From positions 62,001 through 126,000 of the IMG/VR virus record IMGVR_UViG_3300024262_006558: a stretch of 64,000 nucleotides of DNA; one strand, written 5' to 3'. Made by a program: the position numbers and the translations under genes. The notes beneath the pieces are model-generated. The model saw nothing but the letters and a program-made list of their open reading frames with translations. It was not told where the DNA came from and did not search any database. This document shows, piece by piece, positions 24,565 to 63,608 of the stretch. Within the stretch, counting starts at the first letter, position 1; each line of letters starts with the position of its first letter.

Positions 24565-24624
24565 ATAACAGAAAATAAAAGATAACTCTTCGAGTCGCTT
24601 AACGCTTATCTTTATTTTCGTGTT
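24565..24624 (-). repeat. Terminal hairpin site of array A, inverted copy of 60263..60322
   Basis: The reverse complement matches 60263..60322 at 59/60 nt. Confidence 0.95.
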
Positions 24625-24688
24625 GTATGCCATTAAAACGGTACGCTCGTACCTCGCCATACAACATGGTATATAAAACATACACTCA

Positions 24689-24847
24689 CTACCACTTTTC
24701 TTCTTTAAGAATTATAGGGTCAAAGGCGTAACCTAAATACGCCTTATACAGTTCAGGTCTTATCCAACCCCTATGTTTAGTTTTTAACCAAATTCCTTTT
24801 TTTATACGCCTTATTATGCGTATTTCATTCCATATACTTGTTATCAT
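24689..24847 (-). CDS. 52-aa basic, Trp-rich peptide encoded inside a hairpin loop
   Basis: Hand translation MITSIWNEIRIIRRIKKGIWLKTKHRGWIRPELYKAYLGYAFDPIILKEEKW. Flanked by arms gtatataaaacata / tacgtttcatatac. Confidence 0.6.
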   Translation of the reverse strand: MITSIWNEIRIIRRIKKGIWLKTKHRGWIRPELYKAYLGYAFDPIILKEEKW

Positions 24848-24890
24848 AATCCGTTCGTTTTACGTTTCATATACTTACCGTTGTAACACA

Positions 24891-25181
24891 TTAGCCAACT
24901 CTCGCTAAGTGCTTTCTAAAATCTTCGTTTTCCTTTTCCATAAATTCAGTAGCCTTTTGCATACATTCAATTAGGTTGTGGTTCTTGGTTTCTATTATTT
25001 CAGCAACTCCTTTCCATTGTCTTACTTCAGATGGGCTACCTTTGTCGCTTACATTTATGAAATAACCATCTTCATAGTCATACATAAAACAGATATTTCT
25101 TTCTTTTGCCAACGCTTCAAAACGTGTTACAACATTTTGTATAGTGCATGGCTTAATTTCGTTTTCTTTATTAGTGTTCAT
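24891..25181 (-). CDS. Cassette hypothetical protein (starts in loop, reads through the site)
   Basis: CTIQNVVTR is encoded by the hairpin arm and GTT. Confidence 0.65.
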   Translation of the reverse strand: MNTNKENEIKPCTIQNVVTRFEALAKERNICFMYDYEDGYFINVSDKGSPSEVRQWKGVAEIIETKNHNLIECMQKATEFMEKENEDFRKHLARVG

Positions 25182-25263
25182 CCTTATTTAAGTTTTTGGT
25201 CATTTATTTAATTAGCGGTTTCAAATCGCCACGACACCATACAAGATGCCGTTGTGTGTAATA

Positions 25264-25473
25264 CTAGCAACTACCATATCTGAAACTCCCAAATCCTTCA
25301 CCTTCGTATTCAGAATCAATAAAGAACCCTAATTTATCAAGTTCCTCAATATCATCCTTGCTCACTAATTCAGGGTCAATAGCTACATAAAAGTAGTCGT
25401 GTTCACAATGGCTTGGGTTTCTTGGGTTGCCATATTTTAAAAGTATTTGTAATGCTTTAATTAAATCTTCCAT
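25264..25473 (-). CDS. Cassette hypothetical protein
   Basis: MEDLIKALQILLKYGN...HCEHD. ATG at 25473. Confidence 0.7.
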   Translation of the reverse strand: MEDLIKALQILLKYGNPRNPSHCEHDYFYVAIDPELVSKDDIEELDKLGFFIDSEYEGEGFGSFRYGSC

Positions 25474-25612
25474 CTTTCTATTTAGTTTGTGGCTTAAATT
25501 CCGTACTACACACAACAATGTATATAGTTTATAAGCCTAATTAATATTATTTTTCAATTTGTAAATTTGTGCTATGGCTTACAAAACCATATACTCAACG
25601 TTATGCTTAACA

Positions 25613-25864
25613 CTATTGCATTAATTCTAACATAGCGTCTATACCATGTATTTGTTTAGTTGCTTTGAGTGTATCGTCTTCTTTGCTCTCTATATTTAAA
25701 GAGTAGCTTTTGCCATAACAAACTACTTTATCACTATGTATGTGGCAAAATCCAGCACTTATAGGTTCAAGGTGTTTAAAAGTCGAGTGTTCTATTGTTG
25801 TCGGGAAAATTATAATTTCGTCATATTCTCCTAATCTTACGTATTTCTGTTTTGTATCGTACAT
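25613..25864 (-). CDS. Cassette hypothetical protein
   Basis: KYV...IIIFP..IEHS...PISAGFC....CYGKSYSLNI pattern, typical of small phage proteins. Confidence 0.7.
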   Translation of the reverse strand: MYDTKQKYVRLGEYDEIIIFPTTIEHSTFKHLEPISAGFCHIHSDKVVCYGKSYSLNIESKEDDTLKATKQIHGIDAMLELMQ

Positions 25865-25960
25865 TTTCAATTTTAGTTTAGTGGTTTAACAATCCGTGAT
25901 AAGCATAACACAACCTATAAAGCCAAAAAAAAGGCTTATAGCTTTGTGCATTAGGCACAA

Positions 25961-26185
25961 TTAAGAAACGAACTCATTAAATTCATCTTCCTTAATTTCT
26001 CGTGCTTTACTATTCGTTACACCACCATACTTTTTAGATACCTTTAAAACCGCATCATCTTCATTTAATGCAAATGTGTAAGCACTCGAAGGTGTACAGT
26101 AAGGTCTTGATACCCTATAAAATTTAACTGTGCCTAACATTGTGTATAGCACATTGCTTTCGGTGTTTTTTGATACTGTATTCAT
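25961..26185 (-). CDS. Cassette hypothetical protein (reads through site)
   Basis: VLYTMLGTV is encoded by the arm and GTT. Confidence 0.6.
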   Translation of the reverse strand: MNTVSKNTESNVLYTMLGTVKFYRVSRPYCTPSSAYTFALNEDDAVLKVSKKYGGVTNSKAREIKEDEFNEFVS

Positions 26186-26257
26186 AGTTTTAAGTTTTTT
26201 ATTTTCAATTTAAGTTAGTGAGGCAACGCGCCATACACTCGTTCGTTATAGTGCATA

Positions 26258-26440
26258 TTATTGCTTTACTTCTTTACCACAATCAAAACACTCGTATTCT
26301 GTTTCGCTTATTGGTTTTTGCATACTTGGCTGCACACAATCGCAATAAAACGTACCCTTCGGCACAATAACATTATCTATATTTAATAGCTTGTTTTCTG
26401 CTTCCTTTTTACCTTCGTTGTACATTTGAAAATCATTCAT
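26258..26440 (-). CDS. Cassette Cys-rich small protein (reads through site)
   Basis: LNIDNVIVP crosses the site. Contains CxC...CxxC. Confidence 0.6.
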   Translation of the reverse strand: MNDFQMYNEGKKEAENKLLNIDNVIVPKGTFYCDCVQPSMQKPISETEYECFDCGKEVKQ

Positions 26441-26500
26441 AATTCATATTTTTAAGTTATTAATCGCTACTAAAACATAGACCTTACATTATATTTAATG

Positions 26501-26698
26501 CTACTTATGTAGTTCTAAACAACGGTATCTAAAATTATATTCATCGTACCAAAAACTTCTACAATTCCACATATTTATAGCATCCCCATAAACATTATTA
26601 TCAAACTTTAACCCTCTTTCTTCTGCTTGTTTGCAACTGTCTATCACTTTAAATCTGTGATAAAAGCATACAGTCATAAATCTTAATATTTTTTTCAT
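26501..26698 (-). CDS. Cassette hypothetical protein
   Basis: 65 aa, with NVYGDAIN..NCRS.W. Confidence 0.65.
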   Translation of the reverse strand: MKKILRFMTVCFYHRFKVIDSCKQAEERGLKFDNNVYGDAINMWNCRSFWYDEYNFRYRCLELHK

Positions 26699-26792
26699 TT
26701 TATCTATTTTGTTTTTAGTTAATTAACCGCACTAAAATATAACACGGTATAAAATGGCATTAAAACGCCATCTATACAACCGTTATATGCAA

Positions 26793-27101
26793 TTATAGTT
26801 TTAGTATTTGTTTAATGTCTGAATAACTAAACGTGCTACTTTTGAATTGATTCTTATCATTAGGGTTATACTTACCTATTTTATGACAATCTCTTTGTAT
26901 ATGATACAATAAATCACCAGTAGCGTACAGACTGCCATCTTTATTTATGCTGTAAACTACCCCTTCTTTTACCGTGTACAAATCTCTTCTTGCAACATAA
27001 TCTCTACCACAATAACACAAAGATATTTCCGCAAACAACCCACCTTCAAGCTCTCCACTTATTCTTAAATTTTCGGATAGTTCTTTTTCTATTAAATCCA
27101 T
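26793..27101 (-). CDS. Cassette hypothetical protein
   Basis: 102-aa ORF bounded by complementary ends. Confidence 0.65.
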   Translation of the reverse strand: MDLIEKELSENLRISGELEGGLFAEISLCYCGRDYVARRDLYTVKEGVVYSINKDGSLYATGDLLYHIQRDCHKIGKYNPNDKNQFKSSTFSYSDIKQILKL

Positions 27102-27256
27102 TCTATTAAGTTTATCGGTTAATAATCAACTGCATACAGCATATAGTAAACGGCAATACAAAACTTCTACTTTAACATTATGAGCAACATTTTAACCATT
27201 TCTTTATTTGTGGTTATTTATCCGTAAAATAAAACATTTTATAGCTGTACTCATTA

Positions 27257-50607: not shown

Positions 50608-51056
50608 TGAAAAAGATATTCTACATATCTCAATGCCCGCTACCGCATCCTAACTTAGACCTTGAAAGTGAGGTAGGTGAATTCATTGAAAAATTTATTC
50701 ACCTACCTTTTATTCATCAAACAAATGCGTGGTATGAGAAAAGATTTAATGAAGCTATAGACGCTTTTAATTCCCAGAGAGATAGTATAGGCAACGATCT
50801 ATTTAATACTGGAGGTAAGATGAGATTAAAAAGGGATTCAATATTATGGATCAGGAAAATTGCTCATATAAAAATTAAAATCGACCTTCTTGAAGGTATG
50901 GAAATAAATAATTCAGAATCAACCCCTATATACAATCAAAAGTTTATAGAAAAAAAGATTCTAAAATTAGAAGGGGATTTAAAATTAAACACACTTTTCC
51001 CTTTTCACAATTACGCTAATAGGTTTGATATAGCAAATGGAGGAATGGTAGTATAA
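50607..51056 (+). CDS. Hypothetical protein
   Basis: 149-aa ORF in operon. Confidence 0.55.
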   Translation: MKKIFYISQCPLPHPNLDLESEVGEFIEKFIHLPFIHQTNAWYEKRFNEAIDAFNSQRDSIGNDLFNTGGKMRLKRDSILWIRKIAHIKIKIDLLEGMEINNSESTPIYNQKFIEKKILKLEGDLKLNTLFPFHNYANRFDIANGGMVV

Positions 51057-51058
51057 TT

Positions 51059-51970: not shown

Positions 51971-51971
51971 T

Positions 51972-53162
51972 ATGACACCCACCTGGAAAGATGTAATGAA
52001 ATTTGAATTGCCTGATAACCCTATTATTTTTGATATAGGAGGATTTAATGGAGACTGGACCCAAATAGCGTTAGATGAATATACTGCACCAACGATTTAT
52101 GTGTTTGAGCCTGTAAAGCAGTTTTATGAAAAAATCAAAAAAAGATACGCCGATAAAAAAAATGTTAAAGTATTTCATTTTGGATTATCTGACTCCACAA
52201 CATCTTTGGAAATTTCTGTATCTGGAGACGCCTCTTCTGTATTTAAGACAAATGGCGCCTCAGAAACTATACAGCTTAAAAGCATTGTTGAATTCATGAA
52301 GGAAGAGGGGGTTTACCATGTTGATCTTGCTAAGATCAACATAGAAGGGGAAGAATATAGACTCTTAGAGCACTTGGTAAAACTGCCTGAACTAAACATT
52401 TTTAACAATTTTTTAATACAATTTCATAAGTTTGTAGACAATTACGAAGAGAGAAGAAGGCTAATTCAAAAGGAGTTATCTAAATATTATGACATGCCTT
52501 TTAATTTTGAAATGATCTTTGAAGGATGGTCTAATAAAAAGGTTGAATTGATTAATTGTGTAGGAGATAGTCATGTTAGCAATTTTGCTAACACAGAAAA
52601 ATTGACTGATATGAAAGTGCCGTCTATCAATAATATGTTTAAAACTTATAGAGCTGGCCCGTACACTGCTTTTAATGTAAATCAAAAAAGCGATGTTAAA
52701 AACTATATAGAATCTATTAGCGATAAAGAGTCTTTACTTATTTGTTTTGGGGAAATAGACTGCAGAGCGCAAGTGAAAAAGGTAATGGAAAATACCAACA
52801 GGAAATATAGAGAAGTGATAGACGAAATTATAGATAACTATATAGATATAATTCAAAACTTTAAAGGTGACAATGTATATTTATGCTCAATAACCCCATG
52901 CATAGAGGATAAACCTCACTGGTACTACTATGAATCTCACCAGGAAGCCTTTGACTGCCCTAAAGGGACTAAGGAAGAAAGAAATTCATATAAAGAATAT
53001 TTTAATGAAAAATTAAAAAGTATATCTTCAAAAAAAGGATATAAATTCATTAGCATTTTTGACTATGTCAAAGATAGAAAAGATTTTTACCTAGATGATA
53101 TACATCTATCTCCAAAAAAAGTTAATTACTTAATAAGAAGGGAGGTACTAAAATTAGCATAA
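51972..53162 (+). CDS. FkbM-family methyltransferase fused to SGNH-hydrolase-like domain
   Basis: DIGGFNG, FEP, KINIEGEEY; then GDSH, FGEIDCR, DDIHL. Confidence 0.8.
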   Translation: MTPTWKDVMKFELPDNPIIFDIGGFNGDWTQIALDEYTAPTIYVFEPVKQFYEKIKKRYADKKNVKVFHFGLSDSTTSLEISVSGDASSVFKTNGASETIQLKSIVEFMKEEGVYHVDLAKINIEGEEYRLLEHLVKLPELNIFNNFLIQFHKFVDNYEERRRLIQKELSKYYDMPFNFEMIFEGWSNKKVELINCVGDSHVSNFANTEKLTDMKVPSINNMFKTYRAGPYTAFNVNQKSDVKNYIESISDKESLLICFGEIDCRAQVKKVMENTNRKYREVIDEIIDNYIDIIQNFKGDNVYLCSITPCIEDKPHWYYYESHQEAFDCPKGTKEERNSYKEYFNEKLKSISSKKGYKFISIFDYVKDRKDFYLDDIHLSPKKVNYLIRREVLKLA

Positions 53163-53959
53163 TGAAAGACATAATAGTAAAAAGTAATTGGGGCATGAAA
53201 GTTAATCTACAACATGAAAAACAAATATATCTTTTTGTTGATGATTTATCTGGAGCGAACACTCAAGTTGACGGTGTTAAGATTTTGTATTTATGTGAGC
53301 CAAATGAAATTTCAGGATTAGCTCAAAAAGCTATTTTAGAAAGCAGCAAATTTGATTACGTATTAACCCATGAATCAACAGTGTTAGACAGATGTAAAAA
53401 TGCTGTACTGTTTGAATTTGGAGGTTGTTGGATTCAAGGATATGAGTTCCCAGAAAAAGAGTTCTCAGTTTCAACAATCGTAGGTTTTAAGAAAATGGCT
53501 GAAGGTCATCTATTAAGACATAATTTATGGATTAGACAAGATGCTATAACTACTCCTAAAAAGTTCTTTATTAGCGGTAATGATCCTCACCACTTAAGGA
53601 TGCCAGCATTTGGAGAAAACCCAGTATTGGAAGGGGAAAAAACCCCATTGTTTGATAGCATGTTTCATATTGTTATTGAAAACTGTAAGAAAGACAATTG
53701 GTTTACAGAAAAGTTAATAGACACATTACAAACGAAGACATTACCTATTTACTGGGGATGCCCTAATATAGGTAACTGGTTCAATACTGACGGGATGATA
53801 ATAGTTAATAATGTTGACGATCTTATTGAGCAAGTAAATAAATTAACCCCAGAATTATATCAAGAAAAACTTTCTTTTATTGAAAGAAATTACGAAAAAT
53901 CCAAAGAGTTTATTAACTTAAGTGATAGGGTTGCAGATAAATTAAAAGAGATTTTATAA
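53162..53959 (+). CDS. GT10 (alpha-1,3-fucosyltransferase-like) protein
   Basis: FHIVIEN....WFTEKL.D......PIYWG.PNI. Confidence 0.75.
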   Translation: MKDIIVKSNWGMKVNLQHEKQIYLFVDDLSGANTQVDGVKILYLCEPNEISGLAQKAILESSKFDYVLTHESTVLDRCKNAVLFEFGGCWIQGYEFPEKEFSVSTIVGFKKMAEGHLLRHNLWIRQDAITTPKKFFISGNDPHHLRMPAFGENPVLEGEKTPLFDSMFHIVIENCKKDNWFTEKLIDTLQTKTLPIYWGCPNIGNWFNTDGMIIVNNVDDLIEQVNKLTPELYQEKLSFIERNYEKSKEFINLSDRVADKLKEIL

Positions 53960-54032
53960 TGAGGGTCATAGGAAACTATTTTTTCACCATTCTAGAAAAA
54001 GGGGAAGTTTGAAACTTTAAAATATATTGAAA

Positions 54033-54824
54033 ATGTATAAAAATATTGTCACATCTCAACTTGCTGGAGGCCTTGGCAACTATTTATTTCAAATAGCTGC
54101 AGCATACTCTTATGCTCTAAAGCATGGCAAAAAGCCAGTTTTTAACACTAATTTATCCATAAAAGTTCACAGGGGAATAGAATGTTATTTTGACAACATA
54201 CTTCGATCGATAGAGAAGAAAGATACGGTAGCAACTCAGACCACAATTGGTGAACAAGGATTTCAATTTACAGAATTGCCTTTTGTTGCAAATGGAGTAG
54301 CTTTAACTGGATATTTTCAATCTGAAAAATACTTTAAGGAATACGAAAAAGAGATTAAAGATCTCTTTTCCTGCCCTGATCACATAAAAGAATCTATAAA
54401 CAAAAGATTCCCTAGTATGGATAGTGTGGAATCATGTTCTATACATGTCCGCAGAGGTGACTATGTAAAACTGCAAGATATACACCCAGTTCAGAGCATG
54501 CCTTACTTTATGAAAGCTTTAAATAAGATGCCAAAAGATTGTAGCATATTTGTTTTTTCTGATGATATAGAGTGGTGTAAAAATTCTTTCCCAGATATGG
54601 GGGAAAGAATTCATTTCGTAGAAGGATATTCCGATGTAGAAGATTTGTATTTAATGTCAATGTGTGATCATAACATTATTTCAAATAGCACTTTTTCATG
54701 GTGGGCTGCCTGGTTAAATGATAATCCTAAAAAAATAGTAGTGGCTCCAAAGAAATGGTTTGGGCCAATGAACTCTCATTTAGATACAAAGGATATTTAT
54801 CCAGAAAAATGGGAGAAAATATAA
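54033..54824 (+). CDS. GT11 alpha-1,2-fucosyl/colitosyl-transferase
   Basis: GGLGNYLFQ, GYFQSEKYF, HVRRGDY, FSDDI.WC, NSTFSWW.AWL. Confidence 0.92.
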   Translation: MYKNIVTSQLAGGLGNYLFQIAAAYSYALKHGKKPVFNTNLSIKVHRGIECYFDNILRSIEKKDTVATQTTIGEQGFQFTELPFVANGVALTGYFQSEKYFKEYEKEIKDLFSCPDHIKESINKRFPSMDSVESCSIHVRRGDYVKLQDIHPVQSMPYFMKALNKMPKDCSIFVFSDDIEWCKNSFPDMGERIHFVEGYSDVEDLYLMSMCDHNIISNSTFSWWAAWLNDNPKKIVVAPKKWFGPMNSHLDTKDIYPEKWEKI

Positions 54825-54967
54825 TGATTTAGGTAGTGATATTAATCTGAATCACTTTTGAATTTTGAAGGACCTAAAATGAGGAAAATGTTAAACGATA
54901 AAGGTAGTAAATGATTATCTAGATAATCATTTAATAAATAGAATTAAACGTATTTATAAAAAAGATT

Positions 54968-55348
54968 GTGAAATTTATGAGAAAACTCTTCTACGTAAAT
55001 AATAGTGGATATAAAACGTCTCTTAATCAAACTCTCAGGCAAGCTGAAGAATCTGCCACAATTAATTACATAAGGGAGAAGTGCAGCGTTTTTATAGCTC
55101 AAATGATTGAATTAAATATAGAGTCGACATTTGGCCCAATGGAATTGCATAACTTTAATATAAGGTGTAGCAAATTTTTTAAGACTATTAATGTCCATGA
55201 TTTTGGTGTAGTATATGATGAGTCTATTTGGATGCCTCAAGACATACCAAGAAATATGTTAAGGGTAACAGTTCAATTAAGCAGTTATTTACATGCATAT
55301 GAGATGGACTTCTCTATATCTAATATTAAGAAAAAATACAATTTATGA
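54968..55348 (+). CDS. Hypothetical protein resembling the tail sheath C-terminal domain
   Basis: NQTLRQ...F.VVYDE......IPRNML...VQL parallels sheath GQKTLQR...FNVVMDD......IDRNTL...IQL. Confidence 0.45.
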   Translation: MKFMRKLFYVNNSGYKTSLNQTLRQAEESATINYIREKCSVFIAQMIELNIESTFGPMELHNFNIRCSKFFKTINVHDFGVVYDESIWMPQDIPRNMLRVTVQLSSYLHAYEMDFSISNIKKKYNL

Positions 55349-56277
55349 AAAGTAAAAGACCGACTAATACAATAATAGTAACTGGAGGCTCTGGGTTACT
55401 TGGAAAACATTTACGAGAAATATGGGATAATGATCACGTAATTTATATTTCATCTAAAGACTTTGATCTCACAAACGAGCAATCGGTTAGAACAATGTTT
55501 AAATTTTACCAACCAAAAGTTGTAGTTCATCTAGCGGCTCAAGTTGGAGGTATTATGGATAATTCTAAACATCCAGTTAAATACCTTAACAATAACATAA
55601 AGATGGATGCTAATGTGTTAAAGTGGGCTGAAGATTTCGGAGTCGAAAAAGTAATAGGCATGCTTAGTACATGTATATATCCTGATAATCTAAATGAAGA
55701 TCAATATCCTATGAAAGAGGAAGTGCTTCATGATGGACCTCCAGCTATAACAAATTTCTCATACGGATACGCCAAGCGATGCATGGCAGTTCAAATGGAG
55801 GCGTACAATAAAGAGTTTGGAACCAATTTTCAATGGATTGCTCCATGCAATCTTTATGGGGAGCATGATAATTTTGATCACGAACAAAAAGCTCACTTTA
55901 TTACAGCTTTAATCAAAAAGATTGATACTGCAGTAAAAAATGGAGATGATAATATTCAACTGTTCGGAACTGGGTCTCCATTGCGTCAATTTATGCATGC
56001 TGGAGATTTAGCTAAAATTATCATAGATTGTGTCGAAAATGATTATAATTTAAATATGAATGTTGCAGTCCCTTGGAATTACTCAATTAAGGATATGGCT
56101 GAAATAGCTCTTAAAGCTTGCGGGGCTGAGCATCTAAAGATAGAATTTGACCCATCTAAGCCAGATGGTCAATATAGAAAAGATGCATCAACTGAAAGGT
56201 TTAAAAAAACCTTCCCCGACTTTCAGTTTACCTCACTTGAAGAAGGTATAAAAAAGGTTTATCAAGCATTGCAATAA
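55345..56277 (+). CDS. fcl: GDP-L-fucose synthase / ColC-type epimerase-reductase
   Basis: TGGSGLLG, HLAA.VGGI, STCIYP, YGYAKR, PCNLYG, GTG.PLRQF, KPDG. Confidence 0.9.
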   Translation: MKSKRPTNTIIVTGGSGLLGKHLREIWDNDHVIYISSKDFDLTNEQSVRTMFKFYQPKVVVHLAAQVGGIMDNSKHPVKYLNNNIKMDANVLKWAEDFGVEKVIGMLSTCIYPDNLNEDQYPMKEEVLHDGPPAITNFSYGYAKRCMAVQMEAYNKEFGTNFQWIAPCNLYGEHDNFDHEQKAHFITALIKKIDTAVKNGDDNIQLFGTGSPLRQFMHAGDLAKIIIDCVENDYNLNMNVAVPWNYSIKDMAEIALKACGAEHLKIEFDPSKPDGQYRKDASTERFKKTFPDFQFTSLEEGIKKVYQALQ

Positions 56278-56389
56278 AGTTTAGATATTCATAAAGATGA
56301 TCCTGCTATAGTTTGACAGGTATTGCATTTTAAACTCAAAAATGATACCTTTACCTTTTGACTCTGAATAATAACTTTAATATATCTAT

Positions 56390-56701
56390 ATGAAGCTTAT
56401 AAATCTAAAACAAGTATCTGATCATAAAGTTAACAAATGGCTTGAGGATAATATAGCTGAACTAACCGCATACCAAAAAGAGCGCATTAGAAATGATGAG
56501 ATGGTAAGATGGGCTCCTTTTAAATTCTATGAACGTAGGAAGAAGGTTGACAGTATATGGATTAGGATATCTGCTTTGTTTATACCTTTAGCGTGGACCG
56601 TGCTAGTTATTGGGCTGCCTTTCGACTTTCTCATTACTGGAACTTGGGGATATAATAAGATAGACTGGTTTAGCAACTGGAGCAGCGCTTGTGGGTTTTA
56701 A
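56390..56701 (+). CDS. Hypothetical membrane protein at the head of array B
   Basis: 103 aa with a hydrophobic segment; the stop codon overlaps the first site. Confidence 0.65.
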   Translation: MKLINLKQVSDHKVNKWLEDNIAELTAYQKERIRNDEMVRWAPFKFYERRKKVDSIWIRISALFIPLAWTVLVIGLPFDFLITGTWGYNKIDWFSNWSSACGF

Positions 56702-56738
56702 TGTTAAGTATATGAGTAGGATTTTAAACGATTAAGTA

Positions 56739-56876
56739 ATGAGCAGTAAAAAGCACGATAAATTAAACAACGCAGAAGTTATAAAGGTGTTAGAAGAAAT
56801 AACAACGGAAGAGAAGTTAGCAATGTTTGGAATAACTAAACCAAGTACAGATGATAAAGATAAGCCGAAAAAGTAA
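56739..56876 (+). CDS. 45-aa peptide inside a hairpin loop
   Basis: MSSKKHDKLNNAEVIKVLEEITTEEKLAMFGITKPSTDDKDKPKK, between arms 56708-56729 and 56877-56898. Confidence 0.5.
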   Translation: MSSKKHDKLNNAEVIKVLEEITTEEKLAMFGITKPSTDDKDKPKK

Positions 56877-57051
56877 GTTTAAAATATTACGCATATACCT
56901 TGTTGTGAAGCGTTTTATGGGCGAGATGTTTACTTTTGAGTGCCACCATAAAAAATGCGATGGTAGGTGCTCTTACTTAGGTGATGATAGGCAGACAGGA
57001 GTTTGGATTAGCTTATATGAATGCAATAAGTGCGGAACTGAATGGATGTAA
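56851..57051 (+). CDS. Cassette Cys-rich protein (reads through site)
   Basis: ILRIYLVVKR is encoded by the arm and GTT; C-terminal CxxC. Confidence 0.55.
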   Translation: MIKISRKSKFKILRIYLVVKRFMGEMFTFECHHKKCDGRCSYLGDDRQTGVWISLYECNKCGTEWM

Positions 57052-57073
57052 TGCTTTACAATAATATATATAT

Positions 57074-57382
57074 ATGACATTTGAAGAAATAGAAACAAAC
57101 CCTGATCTTTCAAACAATTCAGAGCAGGAATATGTTAGACTTAAAAAAAGAAACGTAATGATCAGAAAGTCATTCTACCATAGCTACAATAAATCGGTCT
57201 GCGAGTATGATGTAAACGGTCATCCTACCAAATGCGAATGTGGATGCGAGGATTTCGATCAAGATATCATAGAAATGGTCGAAGGTCATATTCATGAATA
57301 TGACCTTACATGCTCAAATGAAGGCTGTAGAAAAATAGTTGGATACTGGTCTTATGGATCTTGGCAGTCTTTAGAATTGTAA
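57074..57382 (+). CDS. Hypothetical Zn-binding protein
   Basis: CECG...C...C...GYWSYG.W. Confidence 0.65.
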   Translation: MTFEEIETNPDLSNNSEQEYVRLKKRNVMIRKSFYHSYNKSVCEYDVNGHPTKCECGCEDFDQDIIEMVEGHIHEYDLTCSNEGCRKIVGYWSYGSWQSLEL

Positions 57383-57395
57383 TAAAACACATATA

Positions 57396-57635
57396 ATGAA
57401 AAAATTTATAGACATAGAATTGCCTAAAAATTTTATGAACGTATCTATTACCGATAACAACGAATTAGTAGCGGATAACAATAGTAGTTCGGAATGGGAT
57501 ACTTTAAAATTCCCATTGCCAAAAAGGGTGTGGGGAGTGTATAGCTATGAAGCTACCGTAGATAATCAAAACGCTAAATCTATTGCTAGACTAGTTGATT
57601 GTCGAGGTTGGATAAGAAGGTTCTTAGAGGTTTAA
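57396..57635 (+). CDS. Hypothetical protein
   Basis: 79-aa ORF. Confidence 0.6.
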   Translation: MKKFIDIELPKNFMNVSITDNNELVADNNSSSEWDTLKFPLPKRVWGVYSYEATVDNQNAKSIARLVDCRGWIRRFLEV

Positions 57636-57645
57636 TTATAGAATT

Positions 57646-57825
57646 ATGGATATAAAAGAAATAAAAAAAGAAGAGGTAAGTGAAATATATGACTTTTTAG
57701 AGGGGCTGCAAGATTACGGACACATTTACCACTACCCGCCCGAAAATCTTGACGAACCTTTCAAAAAGATAATGGAAGGAATTGAAGAGGTGCAGGGATT
57801 GATGAAAGATAGCTTTGGGATGTAA
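57646..57825 (+). CDS. 59-aa hypothetical protein
   Basis: Hand translation MDIKEIKKEEVSEIYDFLEG...KDSFGM. Confidence 0.55.
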   Translation: MDIKEIKKEEVSEIYDFLEGLQDYGHIYHYPPENLDEPFKKIMEGIEEVQGLMKDSFGM

Positions 57826-58183
57826 TCTTATTTACATGCTGTTAATAAAACTAGGGCAACGTTTAACGTTTTCTAGTAGATTATAATATGCACTCTACCA
57901 TGTGCCCGACATCGGCAACATGGTTTTATGTTGAATTAAATAGGGGTGGGATTAAATGAACGTCTGCACTAGTCGAGTTGAAAATATACTTGCAAGTTGG
58001 TACTAAAGCCAACTATCCTAGCCAACGGGCTTTGCGGTTCACCCTATTTAATGTAACGCTTTGTGTATGGTTAGTAAACCCTTGCACAGACTTTCAAAAT
58101 TAGTATAAACCTTGGTGGGTTTATTACCTACAATGTTAAATGTATGCTTTGCTAGAGATTACGGACAGATAACCACTAAAACA

Positions 58184-58489
58184 ATGGACTTAAAAAAGAG
58201 AATAGAAGAAATTACACAAAACGGAACGCTTGAAAGCGGTGAACAAATAACCTATGTAGATACCGATGACCTTTACTTGTTGCTGAATGAAGTAAACTCT
58301 AGTGAAGTCATACATCTTGTTAGCGATTGGAATGATTGGGTATATGGATCACCTACATCAATAATAGATGGGAGTCATATTGAAGTTATGTGGTCTGACA
58401 ACTCAGTCACTAAAGTTTTTTATGAATGGAGAAGTAAATCTATGGCACATAAGTTACCACCAATAAAGTGGAGGTATTCTAATAGCTAA
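58184..58489 (+). CDS. Cassette hypothetical protein (first 45 codons lie within the hairpin)
   Basis: MDLKKRIEE...SSEVIHLVSDW. GTT at 58319; the TAA overlaps the closing TAAC. Confidence 0.65.
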   Translation: MDLKKRIEEITQNGTLESGEQITYVDTDDLYLLLNEVNSSEVIHLVSDWNDWVYGSPTSIIDGSHIEVMWSDNSVTKVFYEWRSKSMAHKLPPIKWRYSNS

Positions 58490-58581
58490 CGGTTTGGCTA
58501 TGTGCTGAACGTAGAGCAACGGAGTTTTGCATATAGCTAGTGTTATATGCTTTTAATTATTAACAACTAAAGATTATAAAA

Positions 58582-58932
58582 ATGAGTGAAACAGTACATT
58601 ACAGAGGGATTGCTACTAAAATTGAGCAACCAAACGACAAGACATTAATTGATGTCGCAAAAAGTATTTTAACAGAACGTAACAAAGAAATAGCCGACTA
58701 TTATGACAATGTAATAGAGTGTTTGTGTGATAGCTATTATAGAGAATTTTTCTACCATTCAAAAACACAGACCCTTTACAAATTAGACAATAATGAATAC
58801 GAGCCTGATGAAGATATAATAAGAGCAGAACCGAAAGAAAACGGGACTATTGAATATGAGTTAAGATATTATAACGGTGGTGCTGGATTTGATGAATGTA
58901 TGGAAGAGGCTTTTGATAAGCTCGATGCTTAA
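58582..58932 (+). CDS. Cassette hypothetical protein
   Basis: MSETVHYRG...YYNGGAGFDE; bounded by gttatatgc/gcatataac. Confidence 0.75.
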   Translation: MSETVHYRGIATKIEQPNDKTLIDVAKSILTERNKEIADYYDNVIECLCDSYYREFFYHSKTQTLYKLDNNEYEPDEDIIRAEPKENGTIEYELRYYNGGAGFDECMEEAFDKLDA

Positions 58933-59036
58933 TTGCATATAACGGCATCCTGTATGATGTCGTGAAACGAAGTGGAATGCATTCATACACCGTGTTGTGT
59001 GTAGTGCGGATTATTAACTGATAACAAAATTAAAAG

Positions 59037-59216
59037 ATGAATGTATTTGATGAATTTTTAATGGAATCTGAAAAGGAACAATTAAAAGACAACCGACTGA
59101 AAGAACAGAAAGATAAAAAAGACTACTCGTATGAACACGATGGTAGAATAGAAACATGTGACGATTGTAGAACACCTATAAACTCACACGGACACTGCCC
59201 TAGATGCGATTACTAG
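59037..59216 (+). CDS. 59-aa cassette protein with CxxC...CxxC zinc finger
   Basis: Hand translation ends TCDDCRTPINSHGHCPRCDY. Confidence 0.65.
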   Translation: MNVFDEFLMESEKEQLKDNRLKEQKDKKDYSYEHDGRIETCDDCRTPINSHGHCPRCDY

Positions 59217-59267
59217 CATTACACACAACGGATGGTAATATGAATAGTGCGGATTAAAAACATAAAA

Positions 59268-59435
59268 ATGGCAAAGACACGAGAACAAAAAAGAATTGAA
59301 AGTGCGGATAAAGTTTGTAGAGAACTTAGATACCAAATAGTTAAATATGGATTGATAGGTGATTGGGACGCATTAAATAAGCACTTTAATTCTTGGATGA
59401 ATAACGCTAAGAAATCTAAATACGACAGACCCTAG
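59268..59435 (+). CDS. 55-aa protein inside a hairpin loop
   Basis: MAKTREQKR..., between arms gtaatatgaatagtgc and gcattatttatattac. Confidence 0.6.
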   Translation: MAKTREQKRIESADKVCRELRYQIVKYGLIGDWDALNKHFNSWMNNAKKSKYDRP

Positions 59436-59514
59436 CATTATTTATATTACGTGTTGTGCGCACGTTTTAATTGCGACACAACGCTAAGTATAACAAACGG
59501 AAAATTTACGACTT

Positions 59515-59673
59515 ATGAGATTTGAATTAATGCAATGGAAATGGTATAGGAAGTGGAAAGGTGGCTCTTATTACCTTATATGGAATTGGCTACCTATGAA
59601 CACTTTTTGGAGCGACAAACTTATTACAAGCTGTGGAGGCAGAGCCATTAAAGAGGAACACTACCCTAAGTAA
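59515..59673 (+). CDS. 52-aa Trp-rich peptide inside a hairpin loop
   Basis: MRFELMQWKWYRKWKGGSYYLIWNWLPMNTFWSDKLITSCGGRAIKEEHYPK. Confidence 0.6.
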   Translation: MRFELMQWKWYRKWKGGSYYLIWNWLPMNTFWSDKLITSCGGRAIKEEHYPK

Positions 59674-59791
59674 ATTTTATGTTTTGTTATACAATGTTGT
59701 ATGGCAAAGCGTACCGTTTTAATGGCATACAACGGTTGAGTATAAACGTAGTGTTTAACTGAACTTAATTTGAAACACAAAACTTAAAATT

Positions 59792-59992
59792 ATGATAAAA
59801 AGATTGATTGAAAAACTGAAAACATTACGTTTATACTTTGTTAGAAAACGTTGTTTTGAGGTGTATTTCACAGATACCAAAAGTGGAAAGGAAGGAAGAA
59901 TTAATTTATGGGTGAAAGATGTCGATGAAGTAGAACCTTACTTTGAAAAACACTTTCCACATTTGGAATTATATGATATAGGAGAATGTTGA
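59792..59992 (+). CDS. Cassette hypothetical protein (reads through site)
   Basis: TLRLYFVRKR is encoded by the arm and the GTT at 59840. Confidence 0.65.
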   Translation: MIKRLIEKLKTLRLYFVRKRCFEVYFTDTKSGKEGRINLWVKDVDEVEPYFEKHFPHLELYDIGEC

Positions 59993-60102
59993 TTACAATG
60001 TTTTCTAACGACCTGTGTAAAATTTCGTGTGAGGCACGAGCAATGAATTTTAAACCTTGTTAGCGTTTCGTTTTTGAGCGTTGGCATTTAAAAACTAAAA
60101 AG

Positions 60103-60264
60103 ATGAAAGTAAGTATTCAGTTCACAAAAGAAGAATTAAGATTATTAAAAAAGGCGTTATTTTTTGGAATAACACATAATGAAAACAACCAAGAAGCAAA
60201 TAAAATGAATGAATTAGATGCGAAAATGAATTTACTGTGTGCGTTGGCAGAAAATGAACGCTAA
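60103..60264 (+). CDS. 53-aa cassette protein
   Basis: MKVSIQFTKEELRLLKKALFFG...; the TAA overlaps the TAAC of the terminal site. Confidence 0.6.
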   Translation: MKVSIQFTKEELRLLKKALFFGITHNENNQEANKMNELDAKMNLLCALAENER

Positions 60265-60322
60265 CACGAAAATAAAGATAAGCGTTAAGCGACTCAAAGA
60301 GTTATCTTTTATTTTCTGTTAT
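60263..60322 (+). repeat. Terminal hairpin site of array B, inverted copy of 24565..24624
   Basis: aacacgaaaataaagataagcgttaagcgactcaaagagttatcttttattttctgttat. Confidence 0.95.
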
Positions 60323-60394
60323 AACGCGCTTTTAGCTACATAATTTTTATTGATTATATTCAAAAATTTGTTTATGTTTTGAATAAAATCATAA

Positions 60395-61594
60395 ATGACG
60401 GAAGTAAAGATACCCTTAGTAAAAGACACTATATCACATGAGGATATGGATGCTCTTGCGGATTGGATTAAAACCTACCCTCGCCTTACGAAAGGCCCAG
60501 AAACAAATGAATTTGAAAAAGAGTGGTCTGAATGGCTAGGTACAAAGTATTCCGTATTTTGTAACTCTGGATCTTCAGCAAACCTTCTTATGCTTTACGC
60601 TCTTATCGTAGCGAAAAGACTTAACAATAAAAAAATAGTGGTACCAGCATTAGCTTGGGCTACGGATCTTGCTCCAGTAATGCAATTGGGTCTTGAGCCA
60701 ATTATATGCGATTGTAATGGTCAAAATCTCGCTGTAGACCTAAATGATTTAGAACGTATTTTCCAGAAAGACAACCCTTCAGCCCTTATGCTGGTATCGG
60801 TTCTTGGTATCCCTCCAAATATGGATGAGATAATTGTTCTTTGTAAAAAGTATGGAGTTATCCTTTTAGAGGATGCTTGTGAATCACTAGGTTCTGAATA
60901 CAAAGGCAATAAACTCGGAACTTTCGGATCCATGTCAACATTCTCACTATATTTCGGACACCATCTTTCAACTATTGAAGGTGGTATGGTATGCACTGAT
61001 GATGAAGAGCTTTATGAAATATTGAAATCTATTCGTTCTCATGGTTGGGACAGAGATGCTTCAGAAGAGTATCGTAAAAAGTGGAGAGATAAATGGGATG
61101 TGGATGATTTTAACGGCCTTTACACTTTCTACCACCCTGGATTCAATTTAAGAGCTACAGATTTACAAGCATTTATAGGTAGAAGGCAAATTAAAAAAGC
61201 TGATGAAGTTTCTAAAATCAGAGCTGCTAATTTTCAGAAATATCAAGAATTGATATCCGATCATTCTGCATGGAAACCTGAACCGCCAGAAGGCGCTTTT
61301 GTTTCCAATTTTTGTTACCCTGTACTGCACGCAAAGAGAAAAGAGATAGTAACAGATCTAATCGCTAATGGCGTTGAAACTAGACCTATGATATGTGGAT
61401 CTATGAGTACTCAACCATTTTATGTGGACAAATACGGCAGAAAAGAATTATACACCGCAAAGCAAATAGATGATTACGGATTCTACGTGCCTAATAATGA
61501 TAAAATGACTGATGAGGACATTCAAACCGTATGCAACATAATCAATAAGCATACTGTAAACCCTGAAGTAGAACCGCAAGAAAACAATCAATAA
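60395..61594 (+). CDS. DegT/DnrJ-fold PLP enzyme, ColD-like GDP-4-keto-6-deoxymannose 3-dehydratase
   Basis: [29 protein letters not shown] (His at the usual Lys position), RSHGW. Confidence 0.8.
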
Positions 61595-61595
61595 A

Positions 61596-63608
61596 ATGAA
61601 AGAAGATAAAAAGAAAGCTCTCATTATAGGTATCACTGGAATGGATGGGTCTCACTTGTCTGAATTACTTTTAGATAAAGGATATGAAGTTCACGGGGTT
61701 ATTAGAAGACATTCTCATATAGGGGGAACTGGACGAATTGATCACATATTCGATGAATTGAAACTTCATTATGGAGACGTTACTGACGCTTTAAATATAT
61801 CTAGGTTAATTTCCGAAATACAACCCGATGAAATTTACAACCTATCAGCTCAGAGCCATGTAAAAGTTTCTTTTGAAGAACCTGGATATACAGCTCAAGT
61901 AGATGCAATTGGAACATTAAACGTAATGGAATCAGCTAGAATCCATTGTCCTAATGCGAAGATTTACCAAGCATCAACCTCTGAGATGTTTGGAGGTTTA
62001 GCTTACAATAGACCTGAAAATGGTTATACTGAAGAATCTCCATTTCACCCGCGATCACCTTATGGTGTCGCTAAGGTGTACGGTTTTTGGATAGTAAAAA
62101 ACTATAGAGAAGCATACAATATGCATGCTTCCAACGGTATATTATTCAATCATGAAGGTGAAAGACGTGGAGTAACTTTTGTTACTAGAAAAGTGACCAG
62201 AGCATTGGCGGCCATTAAGAAGGGTGAGCAAGATGTTTTGACTCTCGGTAACATGGATTCCTTAAGAGACTGGGGATATGCTAAAGAGTATTGTATAAAT
62301 TTAGATGTACCTATTTTGACAACTAGTGGATGGAAATTTTATGATGAAATTTCTGAAGGTGATCAAATAATTAATTTTAATTCTGAAGAAAATCACATAA
62401 CTACAGATACAGTTAAAAGCAAAATAGTAATTAAATCAAATGGTGAAAAAATTAAATTAACAGGCAGAGGAGTTTGTATAAACGTAACTCCAGATCATCG
62501 GATTTACTATCAGAAAAAAAGTAAAAAATCAAAAGGTGGATGGTCAAAATACAAAATTTGTACAGCTAAAGAATTTTATGATTTATTAAAAAATAAAGCG
62601 TACAGAACAAAGTATGACTATAGGCTGCCGCATTTTCAAGATTATGACAAAAAAGAAAATGAAAAATACTCAGATAACGAACTTTATTTAATAGGGGCTT
62701 TATTGGCGGAAGGTTGTCTATCTAATTCAAATCCTGGGAGAGGGTCTATAGTTTCCTTATCTCAATCTTTTATTAAAAATGAAAAAATTCACAAAAAATT
62801 ACAAAAAATAATAGATGATGAAAAACTTGAAGCTAGGTTATGCAATAAAAACAATGGTGTAACTGAATGGGTCTTTACAGCAGATAGTTCTAAAAAAATT
62901 ATTGAATATTTTGATGGATTTGATGTGCATGTGATGCCTAAAGATTTCTATAATTTAAGCAGTAGGCAATGTAAAATTGTATTTGACTCTTTAATGGATT
63001 GCGATGGATGTTGGGGATCATACACATACACTTCTAAACGTAATTTACTAGCATCTGATTTCCAAACTATAGCTCATCTTGCAGGATATAGAACTACGGG
63101 CGTAAAATTTGTAAATAACGTTTACATAACTAGTGTTATAACACGATCCAAAAAACATATGTATATACAAAATGTGGAATCATATAATGATAACAATGAT
63201 AAAGTTTGGTGTGTGAATAGCAATAATGGAACTATCATAACTAGAGATCAAAACTGCATTAATATAGTAGGTAATTGTGAAGGAATGTGGAGAATGTTGC
63301 AACAAGACACTCCTGATGACTATGTACTGGCAACTAACGAAACTCATACAGTAAGACAATTTGTAGAAGAAGCAGTTAGGTATTGCGGATGGGATATCGA
63401 GTGGAGAGGTGAGGGCGTAGATGAAAAAGGTTATGATAAGTCAACTGGTAAACTTCTCATCGAAATTAACCCTAAATATTATAGACCATCTGAAGTTGAT
63501 CTATTGTTAGGGGACGCTACCAAAGCAAAGGAGAAGATGGGTTGGGAACCTAAAACTAAATTTAAAGATCTAGTCAAATTAATGATGGAGCATGATCTGA
63601 AAGCTTAA
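61596..63608 (+). CDS. gmd: GDP-mannose 4,6-dehydratase interrupted by an intein
   Basis: GITG.DGS.L, AQSHV..SF, QASTSE, PRSPYG.AK, LFNHE..RRG.TFVTRK, RDWG.A; resumes after the insert with WRMLQQD.PDDYV. Confidence 0.95.
62292..63275 (+). mobile_element. Intein with LAGLIDADG homing endonuclease (328 aa)
   Basis: Starts [12 protein letters not shown]; block B VTPDH; LIGALLAEG and FDSLMDCDG; ends VWCV...NG....R.....IVGN followed by Cys+1. Confidence 0.92.

What the first reader, a model, noticed from the sequence alone, without database searches (positions are those of the whole stretch)
59453..59733. Empty mini-cassettes, one shared between arrays together with a related loop peptide
Seen: gene-less units gttgtgcgcacgttttaattgcgacacaac (59453-59482) and gttgtatggcaaagcgtaccgttttaatggcatacaac (59696-59733). 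Array A 24622-24665 read on the minus strand is gttgtatggcgaggtacgagcgtaccgttttaatggcatacaac, the same unit with a small indel. In both arrays it follows a loop-encoded 52-aa basic Trp-rich peptide (RRIKKGIW...ILKEEKW vs RKWKGGSY...AIKEEHY), but it has different downstream neighbours. Inference: this is direct evidence of unit reuse and reordering.
Basis: partly seen in the sequence, partly recalled or inferred. Interest (0 to 1): 0.7.

Follow-up and report, generated by a model that had tools for sequence, protein, structure and literature searches.

The report
Gene-less hairpins in phage cassette arrays
The two gene-less hairpins are real, reusable building blocks of integron-like arrays of tiny genes in a 388-kb marine phage, and the same blocks recur with other neighbours in dozens of phages, which points to a phage-borne gene-cassette exchange system.

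Summary
The array-A copy differs from 59696-59733 by a 6-nt indel and one base. The window lies in a 388,594-bp virus record with three arrays of 40-190-aa ORFs. Their junctions read stop, R'' (..AAC), L'' hairpin L', R' (GTT..), leader, ATG, as at integron attC sites. R' and R'' flanking one ORF are complementary (7.75 of 10 positions). The boxes flanking one hairpin are not (3.8 of 10). A mini-unit is an R'..R'' segment with no ORF; the ORF lies in the adjoining L''..L' loop. The shared mini-unit recurs in at least 13 other contigs with different neighbours. A second mini-unit type recurs in 54 contigs. Reuse and reordering are therefore real. The two 52-aa peptides are real but unrelated families (hhalign probability 0.7%). 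Two clean events between near-identical contigs put the exchange borders right after ..AAC. On that parse the mini-unit is the closed 3' lobe of the preceding ORF's cassette, not a separate empty cassette. The hairpins fold better as the sense strand. This genome has no recombinase, but related arrays end 36-67 nt before a small Xer/IntI-like tyrosine recombinase gene. Verdict: an integron-like phage cassette system, a new variant of a known kind.

The parts
59453..59482 (+). Mini-unit 1: an ORF-less R'..R'' hairpin with arms GTTGTGCGCA / TGCGACACAAC and loop TTTTAAT. It is the closed 3' lobe of the cassette 59230-59482.
   Evidence: Sequence. Fold -8 kcal/mol, z -2.8. No other copy in IMG/VR. 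A metagenome contig has a different mini-unit at this place (loose end at 59455).
59696..59733 (+). Mini-unit 2 (the focal unit): an ORF-less R'..R'' hairpin with arms GTTGTATG / CATACAAC and a conserved CCGTTTTAATGG. It is the closed 3' lobe of the cassette 59483-59733.
   Evidence: z -3.8. Copies with other neighbours.
24622..24665 (-). Copy of mini-unit 2 in array A, carrying a 6-nt insertion that adds an inner 5-bp stem.
59515..59673 (+). 52-aa ORF of family B, located in the L''..L' loop.
   Evidence: It has 38 homologous cluster representatives at 65-94% identity. Distant homologues lie in ordinary overlapping-gene operons without hairpin frames.
24689..24847 (-). 52-aa ORF of family A, located in the L''..L' loop.
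   Evidence: It has 9 homologous representatives at 75-92% identity. In L218 a homologue is followed by a different mini-unit.
59483..59498 (+). L''-type box of the family-B cassette. It pairs with the L' box at 59681-59695.
   Evidence: Nearly the same leader and trailer enclose a different 46-aa ORF in L004.
59681..59695 (+). L'-type box (trailer) of the family-B cassette.
24864..24879 (-). L''-type box of the family-A cassette. It pairs with the L' box at 24666-24679.
   Evidence: The same frame type encloses other ORFs in L005, L007 and L134.
24666..24679 (-). L'-type box (trailer) of the family-A cassette.
59230..59482 (+). AAC-to-AAC cassette holding the 55-aa ORF (59268-59435) in the L loop. 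The L'' box is 59230-59244 and the L' box 59442-59452. Mini-unit 1 closes it.
59483..59733 (+). AAC-to-AAC cassette made of L'' box, leader, 52-aa ORF, L' box and mini-unit 2.
59734..60009 (+). Cassette whose 66-aa ORF (59792-59992) starts in the L lobe (59734-59839, 17 codons). It then runs across the L'|R' border (R' at 59840) into the R lobe. The R'' box is 59996-60009.
   Evidence: LR756500 shares 59731-59844 at 95.6% identity and then diverges after GTTAG.
60010..60265 (+). Type-1 cassette: L hairpin 60010-60058, R' box 60059-60072, 53-aa ORF 60103-60264, R'' box 60253-60265.
   Evidence: The hairpin, R' and leader are 98.6% identical to Maribacter phage Panino, where another ORF follows.
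60266..60322 (+). Array-end hairpin (terminator-like) plus GTTAT. There are five copies in the genome.
24565..24621 (-). The same array-end hairpin, at the end of array A.
58944..59229 (+). Type-1 cassette: L hairpin, R' GTTGTGTGTAGTG, 59-aa ORF, R'' CATTACACACAAC. The same R'/R'' pair encloses unrelated ORFs in arrays A and C.
56390..60322 (+). Array B as a whole. It lies between an epimerase gene and an aminotransferase gene.
24565..27250 (-). Array A as a whole. It lies downstream of the tail-sheath gene region.

Best explanation
The units belong to an integron-like gene-cassette system of phages that most likely infect marine Bacteroidota (host inferred). Each junction is a four-box site, R''(..AAC)-L''...L'-R'(GTT..), that folds into two stacked helices. 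In a circular cassette this gives a figure-eight with two lobes. The ORF can lie in the R lobe, as in a classic integron cassette with a closed L hairpin. It can lie in the L lobe, so that the R lobe closes into a 30-44-nt 'mini-unit'. It can also run across both lobes, as the 66-aa ORF does. Cassettes are exchanged as AAC-to-AAC units, so the hairpin travels with the downstream ORF. I infer that a compact Xer/IntI-like tyrosine recombinase does this by acting on sense-strand hairpins. Related phages encode that recombinase directly after the last ..AAC of the array. This jumbo phage lacks it, so its three arrays are recombinase-less, like CALINs. Shown: the architecture, the matched cassette ends, the module reuse, the AAC borders in two events, the sense-strand folding bias and the recombinase adjacency. 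Inferred: that the recombinase acts on these sites, which strand it uses, and how the rarer joints at |GTT and the ORF swaps inside one frame arise.
For: Junction grammar in three arrays. R'/R'' across one ORF match at 7.75 of 10 positions, against 3.8 of 10 across one hairpin (Mann-Whitney p 1.4e-5, permutation p <= 1e-4). Clean 752-nt insertion/deletion flanked by GCTAAC in L164 versus L166. Clean cassette replacement in L183 versus L197, with both borders right after AAC and matched ends in each version. The hairpin is linked to the downstream R' and leader while the upstream R'' differs. This is seen for window 60014-60086 versus phage Panino, for window 58488-58555 versus C1:242247-242314, and for the array-end hairpin in five copies. 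Mini-units equal the frames of full cassettes minus the ORF (L114; array C). The focal mini-unit occurs in at least 13 other contigs and a second type in 54 contigs, with varied neighbours. The linker modules have 3-8 times the contig depth of the ORFs in four metagenomes. The sense strand folds better in 24 of 26 hairpins (p 1.2e-5), beyond the composition control. A tyrosine recombinase (PF13495 + PF00589; best models XerA/integron integrase, XerC, IntI; PDB XerA and IntI4) has its start codon 36-67 nt after an ..AAC box in 11 of 11 loci. These include the isolates Polaribacter phage Leef_1 and Cellulophaga phage Ingeline. It is present in 10 of 72 array loci against 0 of 104 control loci (Fisher p 8.9e-5). 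A site of the same family, P12002L_attC1, was called an attC by HattCI (PMC9892861, supplement).
Against: The 388-kb genome has no tyrosine recombinase, serine recombinase or Y1 transposase. Joints also occur at |GTT: window versus LR756500 at 59840, the alternative mini-unit in run X3, L218, and L203 versus L207. Identical frames enclose unrelated ORFs, with homology ending at the ATG and resuming near the stop codon. A crossover in one box does not explain this. The recombinase lacks the IntI-specific insertion. It could simply be a lysogeny integrase, as PMC8776804 reads it. P12002L_attC1 was the one phage site that gave no verified junction with IntI1. G.U-rich sense-strand hairpins fit an RNA role as well as a DNA role.
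Confidence: 0.55

Rival explanations
1. PeSL-like regulatory linkers. On this reading the hairpins and leaders are RNA-level punctuation of polycistronic early transcripts, serving processing, stability, termination or translation start. The phage's general homologous, annealing or template-switch recombination shuffles ORFs wherever 30-70-nt conserved linkers are shared. No dedicated recombinase is involved, and the neighbouring integrase serves lysogeny only.
For: The sense strand folds better in 24 of 26 hairpins, and 12% of the pairs are G.U. Conserved leaders run up to the ATG, and ORFs are replaced inside identical frames. Joints occur at both borders of the mini-unit. This genome and phage Panino carry no recombinase. 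The arrays lie in variable regions of large phages, like the hyperplastic regions of T4-type phages (PMC2839356). The array-end hairpin looks like a terminator and, in array C, is followed by a promoter-like motif.
Against: It does not explain why R' and R'' of one ORF co-vary across more than 10 different box families while the boxes around a hairpin do not. It does not explain the invariant AAC and GTT. It does not explain why both clean events break exactly after AAC. Sigma-70-type promoters and terminators are not enriched: 12 found against 19 expected, and 3 against 1.8. Bacteroidota promoters are not covered by that scan. The recombinase association has p 8.9e-5.
Confidence: 0.3
2. An ordinary bacterial integron fragment (CALIN) picked up from a host chromosome. 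The cassettes would be made and moved by a host IntI acting on bottom strands at G|TT.
For: The sites have an attC-like architecture. Phage CALINs have been reported, and some of their sites are recombined by IntI1 (PMC9892861).
Against: The modules were found in phage or phage-like contigs only. The true genome contigs matches are MAG contigs; the one examined in detail (L131) carries phage-type genes. The polarity is opposite to the integron rule: borders lie at AAC and the hairpin goes with the downstream ORF. The sense strand, not the bottom strand, folds better. ORFs lie inside the L loop. The cassette ORFs are phage small-gene families.
Confidence: 0.07
3. The mini-units are plain deletion scars. 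On this reading ORFs were lost by slippage between the TAAT of the leader (TTTTAAT) and the TAAT at the stop codon, and the remnant has no role or mobility of its own.
For: The second mini-unit type equals the frame of the array-C cassette minus the ORF, joined at TAAT. Members of the focal family have variable inner inserts of 0-20 nt.
Against: Identical 44-nt copies lie in many otherwise unrelated contexts: 54 contigs for one type and at least 13 for the other. The units always occupy the R-lobe position of a cassette whose ORF is in the L lobe. That is a regular architecture, not random decay.
Confidence: 0.08

Closest known systems
Integron gene-cassette arrays and attC sites, in particular clusters of attC sites lacking an integrase (CALINs) reported in virulent phages (Qi et al. 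2023, PMC9892861)
   Same: Both have co-oriented small ORFs and RYYYAAC / GTTRRRY-type boxes with invariant AAC and GTT. Both have an imperfect inner inverted repeat with an unpaired spacer and a variable loop. In both, the two ends of a cassette are complementary to each other. ORF-less cassettes exist in both. The Polaribacter phage site P12002L_attC1 has the same build and the same CGTTTTAATG loop as the hairpins here.
   Different: Here the exchange borders lie after AAC (R''|L''), not at G|TT, so the hairpin belongs to the downstream ORF. ORFs can occupy the inner (L) loop. The sense strand is the better folder. This genome has no integrase. In relatives the recombinase is a roughly 265-aa Xer-like enzyme without the IntI insertion. 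It lies downstream of the array and is co-oriented with it, not upstream and divergent.
PeSL (promoter-early stem-loop) cassettes of T4-type phages (Arbiol et al. 2010, PMC2839356; Comeau et al. 2014, PMC4122927)
   Same: Both are conserved composite linkers between ORFans in variable regions of large phages. Both show insertion, deletion and replacement of ORFs between closely related phages. Circular intermediates were proposed for PeSLs, and no dedicated recombinase was found in those phages.
   Different: A PeSL is a sigma-70-type promoter plus a terminator, and its crossovers fall at variable points of homology. Here no promoter or terminator enrichment is seen. The boxes are AAC/GTT palindromes with cassette-specific matched ends, and both clean events break at one position.
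Xer-dependent integration of folded single-stranded phage DNA (CTX phi and other IMEX elements). This comparison rests on my own knowledge and was not tested here.
   Same: A Xer-family tyrosine recombinase acts on a hairpin formed by one DNA strand.
   Different: Those elements integrate whole phage genomes at the host dif site. They do not form arrays of gene cassettes.

Membership tests
Integron cassette array / attC | R'' = RYYYAAC and R' = GTTRRRY boxes with invariant AAC and GTT | tested here: met
   Every well-formed junction (17 curated) of arrays A, B and C has ..AAC after the stop codon and GTT.. before the leader, for example GCATATAAC / GTTATATGC. Some junctions are degenerate or lack one box.
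Integron cassette array / attC | Inner imperfect inverted repeat (L''/L') with an unpaired spacer, extra bases on one arm, and a variable loop | tested here: met
   The L'' consensus is G-GTTAGTATATG and the L' consensus is TATAC-NNT. The spacers are about 5 versus 3 nt and the loops 20-190 nt.
Integron cassette array / attC | The two ends of one cassette are complementary, while the boxes of one array site are hybrids | tested here: met
   7.75 of 10 positions match across an ORF against 3.8 of 10 across a hairpin; p 1.4e-5.
Integron cassette array / attC | The attC lies at the 3' end of its cassette, with the crossover at G|TT of R' | tested here: not met
   The insertion/deletion L164/L166 and the replacement L183/L197 have both borders right after AAC. 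The hairpin is linked to the downstream R' and leader. Some |GTT joints also exist.
Integron cassette array / attC | The bottom strand is the folded, recombined strand | tested here: inconclusive
   The sense (top) strand folds better in 24 of 26 sites, by a mean of 3.9 kcal/mol. This is an energy proxy, not a recombination assay.
Integron cassette array / attC | An adjacent intI with the IntI-specific extra domain, divergent from the array, together with attI and Pc | tested here: not met
   The genome has no PF00589 match, and TIGR02249 reaches only 11 bits on an ankyrin protein. The relatives' recombinase is 261-294 aa, matches TIGR02249 in two stretches that skip the middle, scores below all cut-offs, and lies downstream and co-oriented.
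Integron cassette array / attC | Recombination of the sites by an integron integrase | not testable with these tools
   From the literature only: P12002L_attC1, a site of the same family, gave no verified junction with IntI1, whereas five other phage sites did (PMC9892861).
PeSL (T4-type phages) | A composite of a strong sigma-70-type early promoter and a terminator stem-loop | tested here: not met
   12 promoter-like sites against 19.2 expected, and 3 terminator-like sites against 1.8 expected, in 56200-60450. Bacteroidota promoter types are not covered by the scan.
PeSL (T4-type phages) | Conserved linkers flank ORFans in variable regions, and ORFs are inserted, deleted or replaced between close relatives | tested here: met
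   The ORFs tested in or beside the arrays have no Pfam match.
PeSL (T4-type phages) | Crossovers at variable points inside the shared homology | tested here: inconclusive
   Only two clean events were available, and both break after AAC. Frame-internal ORF swaps would fit variable crossovers.

The most novel reading that the evidence does not exclude
These arrays may be a phage-specific, mirror-image counterpart of the integron. A compact Xer/IntI-like recombinase, encoded just after the last ..AAC of the array, would exchange AAC-to-AAC figure-eight cassettes through sense-strand hairpins. The gene could then sit in either lobe of the site. Recombinase-less arrays, such as the three in this jumbo phage, would be served in trans by co-infecting phages or by host homologues. 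If so, this is a second lineage of cassette-capture systems. It would also be a main route by which marine Bacteroidota phages trade small accessory genes.
Probability: 0.35. Interest if true: 0.9.

Novelty: new variant of a known kind. Interest (0 to 1): 0.72.

Why it matters
Integron-like sites in phages have so far been reported as a few scattered attC predictions (PMC9892861). Here the same site family forms long arrays in a 388-kb phage. Individual modules are shared, some at 95-100% identity, across more than 60 viral contigs from seawater, sediment and sponge-associated phages. Four rules differ from integrons: the border lies at AAC, the gene can be in either loop, the sense strand folds better, and a Xer-like recombinase lies at the array's 3' end. 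If the recombinase link holds, the integrases of flavobacterial phages, now read as markers of a temperate lifestyle (PMC8776804), may instead or also drive cassette exchange. It would also give a concrete, testable mechanism for the turnover of small ORFan genes in phage variable regions. Isolated phage-host pairs are available for the test: Leef_1 with Polaribacter and Ingeline with Cellulophaga.

Tried and rejected
- A strict scan for AAC..GTT hairpins with complementary outer boxes found only generic hairpins. It missed the arrays because the outer boxes of one site are not complementary.
- A loose regular expression gave chance-level counts for long loops: 19 hits against 1-18 in shuffles.
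- tRNA and Rfam searches of the window found nothing.
- Relatives of the flanking aminotransferase are at most 57% identical and carry no arrays, so the insertion point of array B could not be compared.
- A statistic on whether a hairpin is linked to its upstream or downstream box across loci had only 2 usable pairs.
- Mini-unit 1 (59453-59482) has no other copy in IMG/VR.
- Six of the 9 genome contigs matches to the 19-mer were chance hits inside genes.
- The weak integron-integrase match in the own genome (11 bits) lies on an ankyrin-repeat protein.
- PHROGs and Pfam scans of the larger ORFs around arrays A and C found no nuclease or recombinase, only a methyltransferase-like gene after array C.
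- The runs hold contigs only and no RNA run holds the region, so transcript ends could not be read.
- A survey of integron integrases across host relatives was not possible, because virus records have no relatives in the tool.

Full report
**Context.** The window is bases 62001-126000 of a single-contig virus record of 388,594 bp with 34% G+C. It encodes a tail sheath at 28077-30458 on the minus strand, and sugar-nucleotide and glycosyltransferase genes. No tRNA or Rfam family is present in the window.

**The observation.** The array-A copy (24622-24665, minus strand) equals the unit at 59696-59733 apart from a 6-nt insertion and one substitution. All three fold as hairpins better than shuffled sequence, with z from -2.7 to -3.8. 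Each shared copy directly follows a 52-aa ORF and has a different downstream neighbour.

**Anatomy of the arrays.** The genome holds three arrays of ORFs of 40-190 aa:
- array A, about 27250 to 24565 on the minus strand;
- array B, 56390-60322 on the plus strand;
- array C, outside the window at C1:241600-249200.

Well-formed junctions read: stop codon, R'' box ending in AAC, L'' box (consensus G-GTTAGTATATG), loop, L' box (TATAC-NNT), R' box starting with GTT, A-rich leader, ATG. This is the build of an integron attC site. The integron hallmark is also present. The R' box before an ORF and the R'' box after it are complementary at 7.75 of 10 positions beyond GTT/AAC, usually 6-7 of them contiguous. 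The boxes on either side of one hairpin match at only 3.8 of 10 (Mann-Whitney p 1.4e-5, permutation p <= 1e-4). More than ten different box pairs co-vary in this way.

**What the mini-units are.** The 52-aa ORFs do not lie between R' and R''. They lie between an L'' box and a complementary L' box: 59483-59498 with 59681-59695, and 24864-24879 with 24666-24679. The following R'..R'' segment is reduced to a hairpin with a TTTTAAT loop. The 55-aa ORF at 59268-59435 is built the same way and is closed by the unit at 59453-59482.

Mini-units carry the ends of real cassettes. In L114 the arms GTTGTATGCC / TGGCATACAAC enclose a 42-aa ORF. A second mini-unit type equals the frame of an 81-aa cassette of array C minus the ORF, joined at TAAT.

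The 66-aa ORF at 59792-59992 starts inside an L loop, where 17 of its codons lie. It continues across the L'|R' border at 59840. The 462-kb phage LR756500 shares the loop part at 95.6% identity and then diverges after GTTAG.

A single picture fits all of these cases. The site is two stacked helices, R and L. A circular cassette would be a figure-eight, and the gene may lie in either lobe or in both. The figure-eight is my inference from the box order. No circle was observed.

**Reuse.** The focal hairpin family has arms GTTGTATG / CATACAAC, a conserved CCGTTTTAATGG and an inner insert of 0-20 nt. It occurs in L002/L006, L003, L004, L005, L007, L008, L018, L046, L064, L127, L131 (twice) and L134. 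It follows at least 8 unrelated ORFs, and every downstream neighbour differs.
- The module that follows it in L007 follows the other mini-unit type in L199.
- The second mini-unit type occurs in 54 contigs.
- L004 has almost the same leader and trailer as the family-B cassette but a different 46-aa ORF.
- Maribacter phage Panino shares the 73-nt stretch at 60014-60086 (hairpin, R' box and start of the leader) at 98.6% identity, with another ORF behind it.
- In four metagenomes the linker modules have 3-8 times the contig depth of the ORFs. Contigs also exist in which the same frames hold other ORFs, and one carries another mini-unit in place of 59453-59482 (contigs only, so this shows presence, not absence).

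**The peptides.** Both are real genes. Family B has 38 cluster representatives at 65-94% identity, with invariant residues. Family A has 9 representatives. They are not demonstrably related:
- BLASTP finds no alignment;
- alignment scores lie within the shuffle range;
- the profile-profile comparison gives probability 0.7%.

Distant family-B genes lie in ordinary overlapping-gene operons without any hairpin frame. A family-A homologue in L218 is followed by a different mini-unit.

**Where exchange happens.** Two clean events between near-identical contigs define the unit of exchange.
- L164 has a 752-nt insert relative to L166. It starts right after GCTAAC and ends with GCTAAC.
- L183 and L197 carry different cassettes between shared flanks. 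Both borders lie right after AAC, and each version has its own matched R'/R'' pair.

The cassette is therefore L hairpin, R' box, leader, ORF, R'' box. This polarity is opposite to the integron, where the attC follows its gene and the crossover is at G|TT. With AAC-to-AAC borders, the last six units of array B hold one ORF each: 58491-58943, 58944-59229, 59230-59482, 59483-59733, 59734-60009 and 60010-60265. On this parse the mini-units are the closed 3' lobes of type-2 cassettes, not separate empty cassettes.

Joints at |GTT also exist, and ORFs are swapped inside identical frames. Neither is explained by a single crossover point. I leave both open.

**Strand.** With RNA energies the sense strand folds better than its complement in 24 of 26 hairpins. 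The mean difference is 3.9 kcal/mol (p 1.2e-5), which exceeds shuffles of the same composition. Mismatches in cross-ORF pairs are G.T on the sense strand 8 times and A.C once. This fits either an RNA role or use of the top DNA strand. It is the opposite of the integron's bottom-strand rule.

**Recombinase.** This genome has no tyrosine recombinase, serine recombinase or Y1 transposase. The weak IntI match lies on an ankyrin protein.

In L131, however, a 261-aa tyrosine recombinase starts 45 nt after the last R'' box of a mini-unit-bearing array.
- Its best family models are XerA/integron integrase, XerC and IntI, all below their cut-offs.
- The nearest solved structures are XerA and IntI4.
- Homologues lie beside arrays in L064, L127, L168, L172, L177, L191, L204, L205 and L218.
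- They also occur in the isolates Polaribacter phage Leef_1 and Cellulophaga phage Ingeline, whose upstream regions show the same cassette grammar.
- In the 11 loci where the gene start could be aligned, the start codon lies 36-67 nt after an ..AAC box, and 7 of them read AAC|TAKTATATRT.
- The gene is present in 10 of 72 array loci and in 0 of 104 control loci (p 8.9e-5).

The source paper reads these integrases only as signs of a temperate lifestyle. That remains a valid alternative.

**Comparison with known systems.** The closest known kinds are integron arrays without an integrase (CALINs) in phages and PeSL cassettes of T4-type phages. For CALINs see PMC9892861. Its site P12002L_attC1 belongs to this site family and gave no verified junction with IntI1. 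For PeSLs see PMC2839356. The system here works like an integron but fails three integron membership features: crossover position, integrase type and place, and strand. It also lacks the promoter-plus-terminator composition that defines a PeSL. I found no paper describing these arrays in flavobacterial phages.

**Verdict.** The sequence facts are confirmed and reuse is real and widespread. Peptide relatedness is not supported. 'Empty cassette' is better described as the closed lobe of a two-lobed cassette. The mechanism is most likely hairpin-directed cassette exchange by a Xer/IntI-like recombinase (confidence 0.55). Linker-mediated general recombination is the main rival (confidence 0.3).

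Noticed in passing
L131:6957-7742; L230 (Polaribacter phage Leef_1) 3489-4352; L231 (Cellulophaga phage Ingeline_1) 3453-4244; also L168, L172, L177, L191, L204, L205, L064, L218: A compact Xer/IntI-like tyrosine recombinase gene starts 36-67 nt after the last ..AAC box of cassette arrays, often behind AAC|TAGTATAT. The window's own genome lacks it.
   Followed up: partly
window 59792-59992 (junction at 59840): The 66-aa ORF is a chimera. Its first 17 codons lie in a hairpin loop shared with phage LR756500. The rest lies in a cassette with its own matched ends, GTTAGAAAACG.. / ..TTTTCTAAC.
   Followed up: partly
window 60266-60322 and 24565-24621 (minus strand); also C1:243259, 244325 and 249091: A 57-60-nt hairpin with an inner short G+C stem and a T-run (terminator-like by eye) closes arrays A and B. 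It occurs five times in the genome. In array C a promoter-like motif follows it.
   Followed up: partly
L221 (G000:C1:238000-252000), for example C1:240912-240959, 245229-245283, 246763-246826 and 249150-249205: A repeated motif of about 40 nt (GTACATAATATCCCC..CACCGTATATATTGGTGAATCTAAAC) precedes the larger ORFs in and around array C. It may be a phage promoter with a Bacteroidota-like TAnnTTTG-type box. It is absent from the window.
   Followed up: no
window 57826-58183: A 358-nt ORF-free stretch lies inside array B. The part at 58054-58130 is also present in contigs of three other metagenomes. It has no Rfam match.
   Followed up: no
window 49230-56277 and 60395-63608: Array B interrupts a phage-borne cluster of sugar-nucleotide and glycosyltransferase genes: epimerases, GDP-mannose dehydratase, a DegT aminotransferase and a family-11 glycosyltransferase.
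   Followed up: no
L221:11466-12767 (C1:249465-250766): A gene whose C-terminal part resembles a DNA methyltransferase follows array C directly. The CALIN reported in Polaribacter phage P12002L also carries methyltransferases.
   Followed up: no
arrays A, B and C; L004, L005, L007: Identical frames (R' plus leader, or L'' plus leader, with the matching trailer) enclose unrelated ORFs. Homology stops at the ATG and resumes a few bases before the stop codon. No mechanism considered here accounts for these in-frame swaps.
   Followed up: partly
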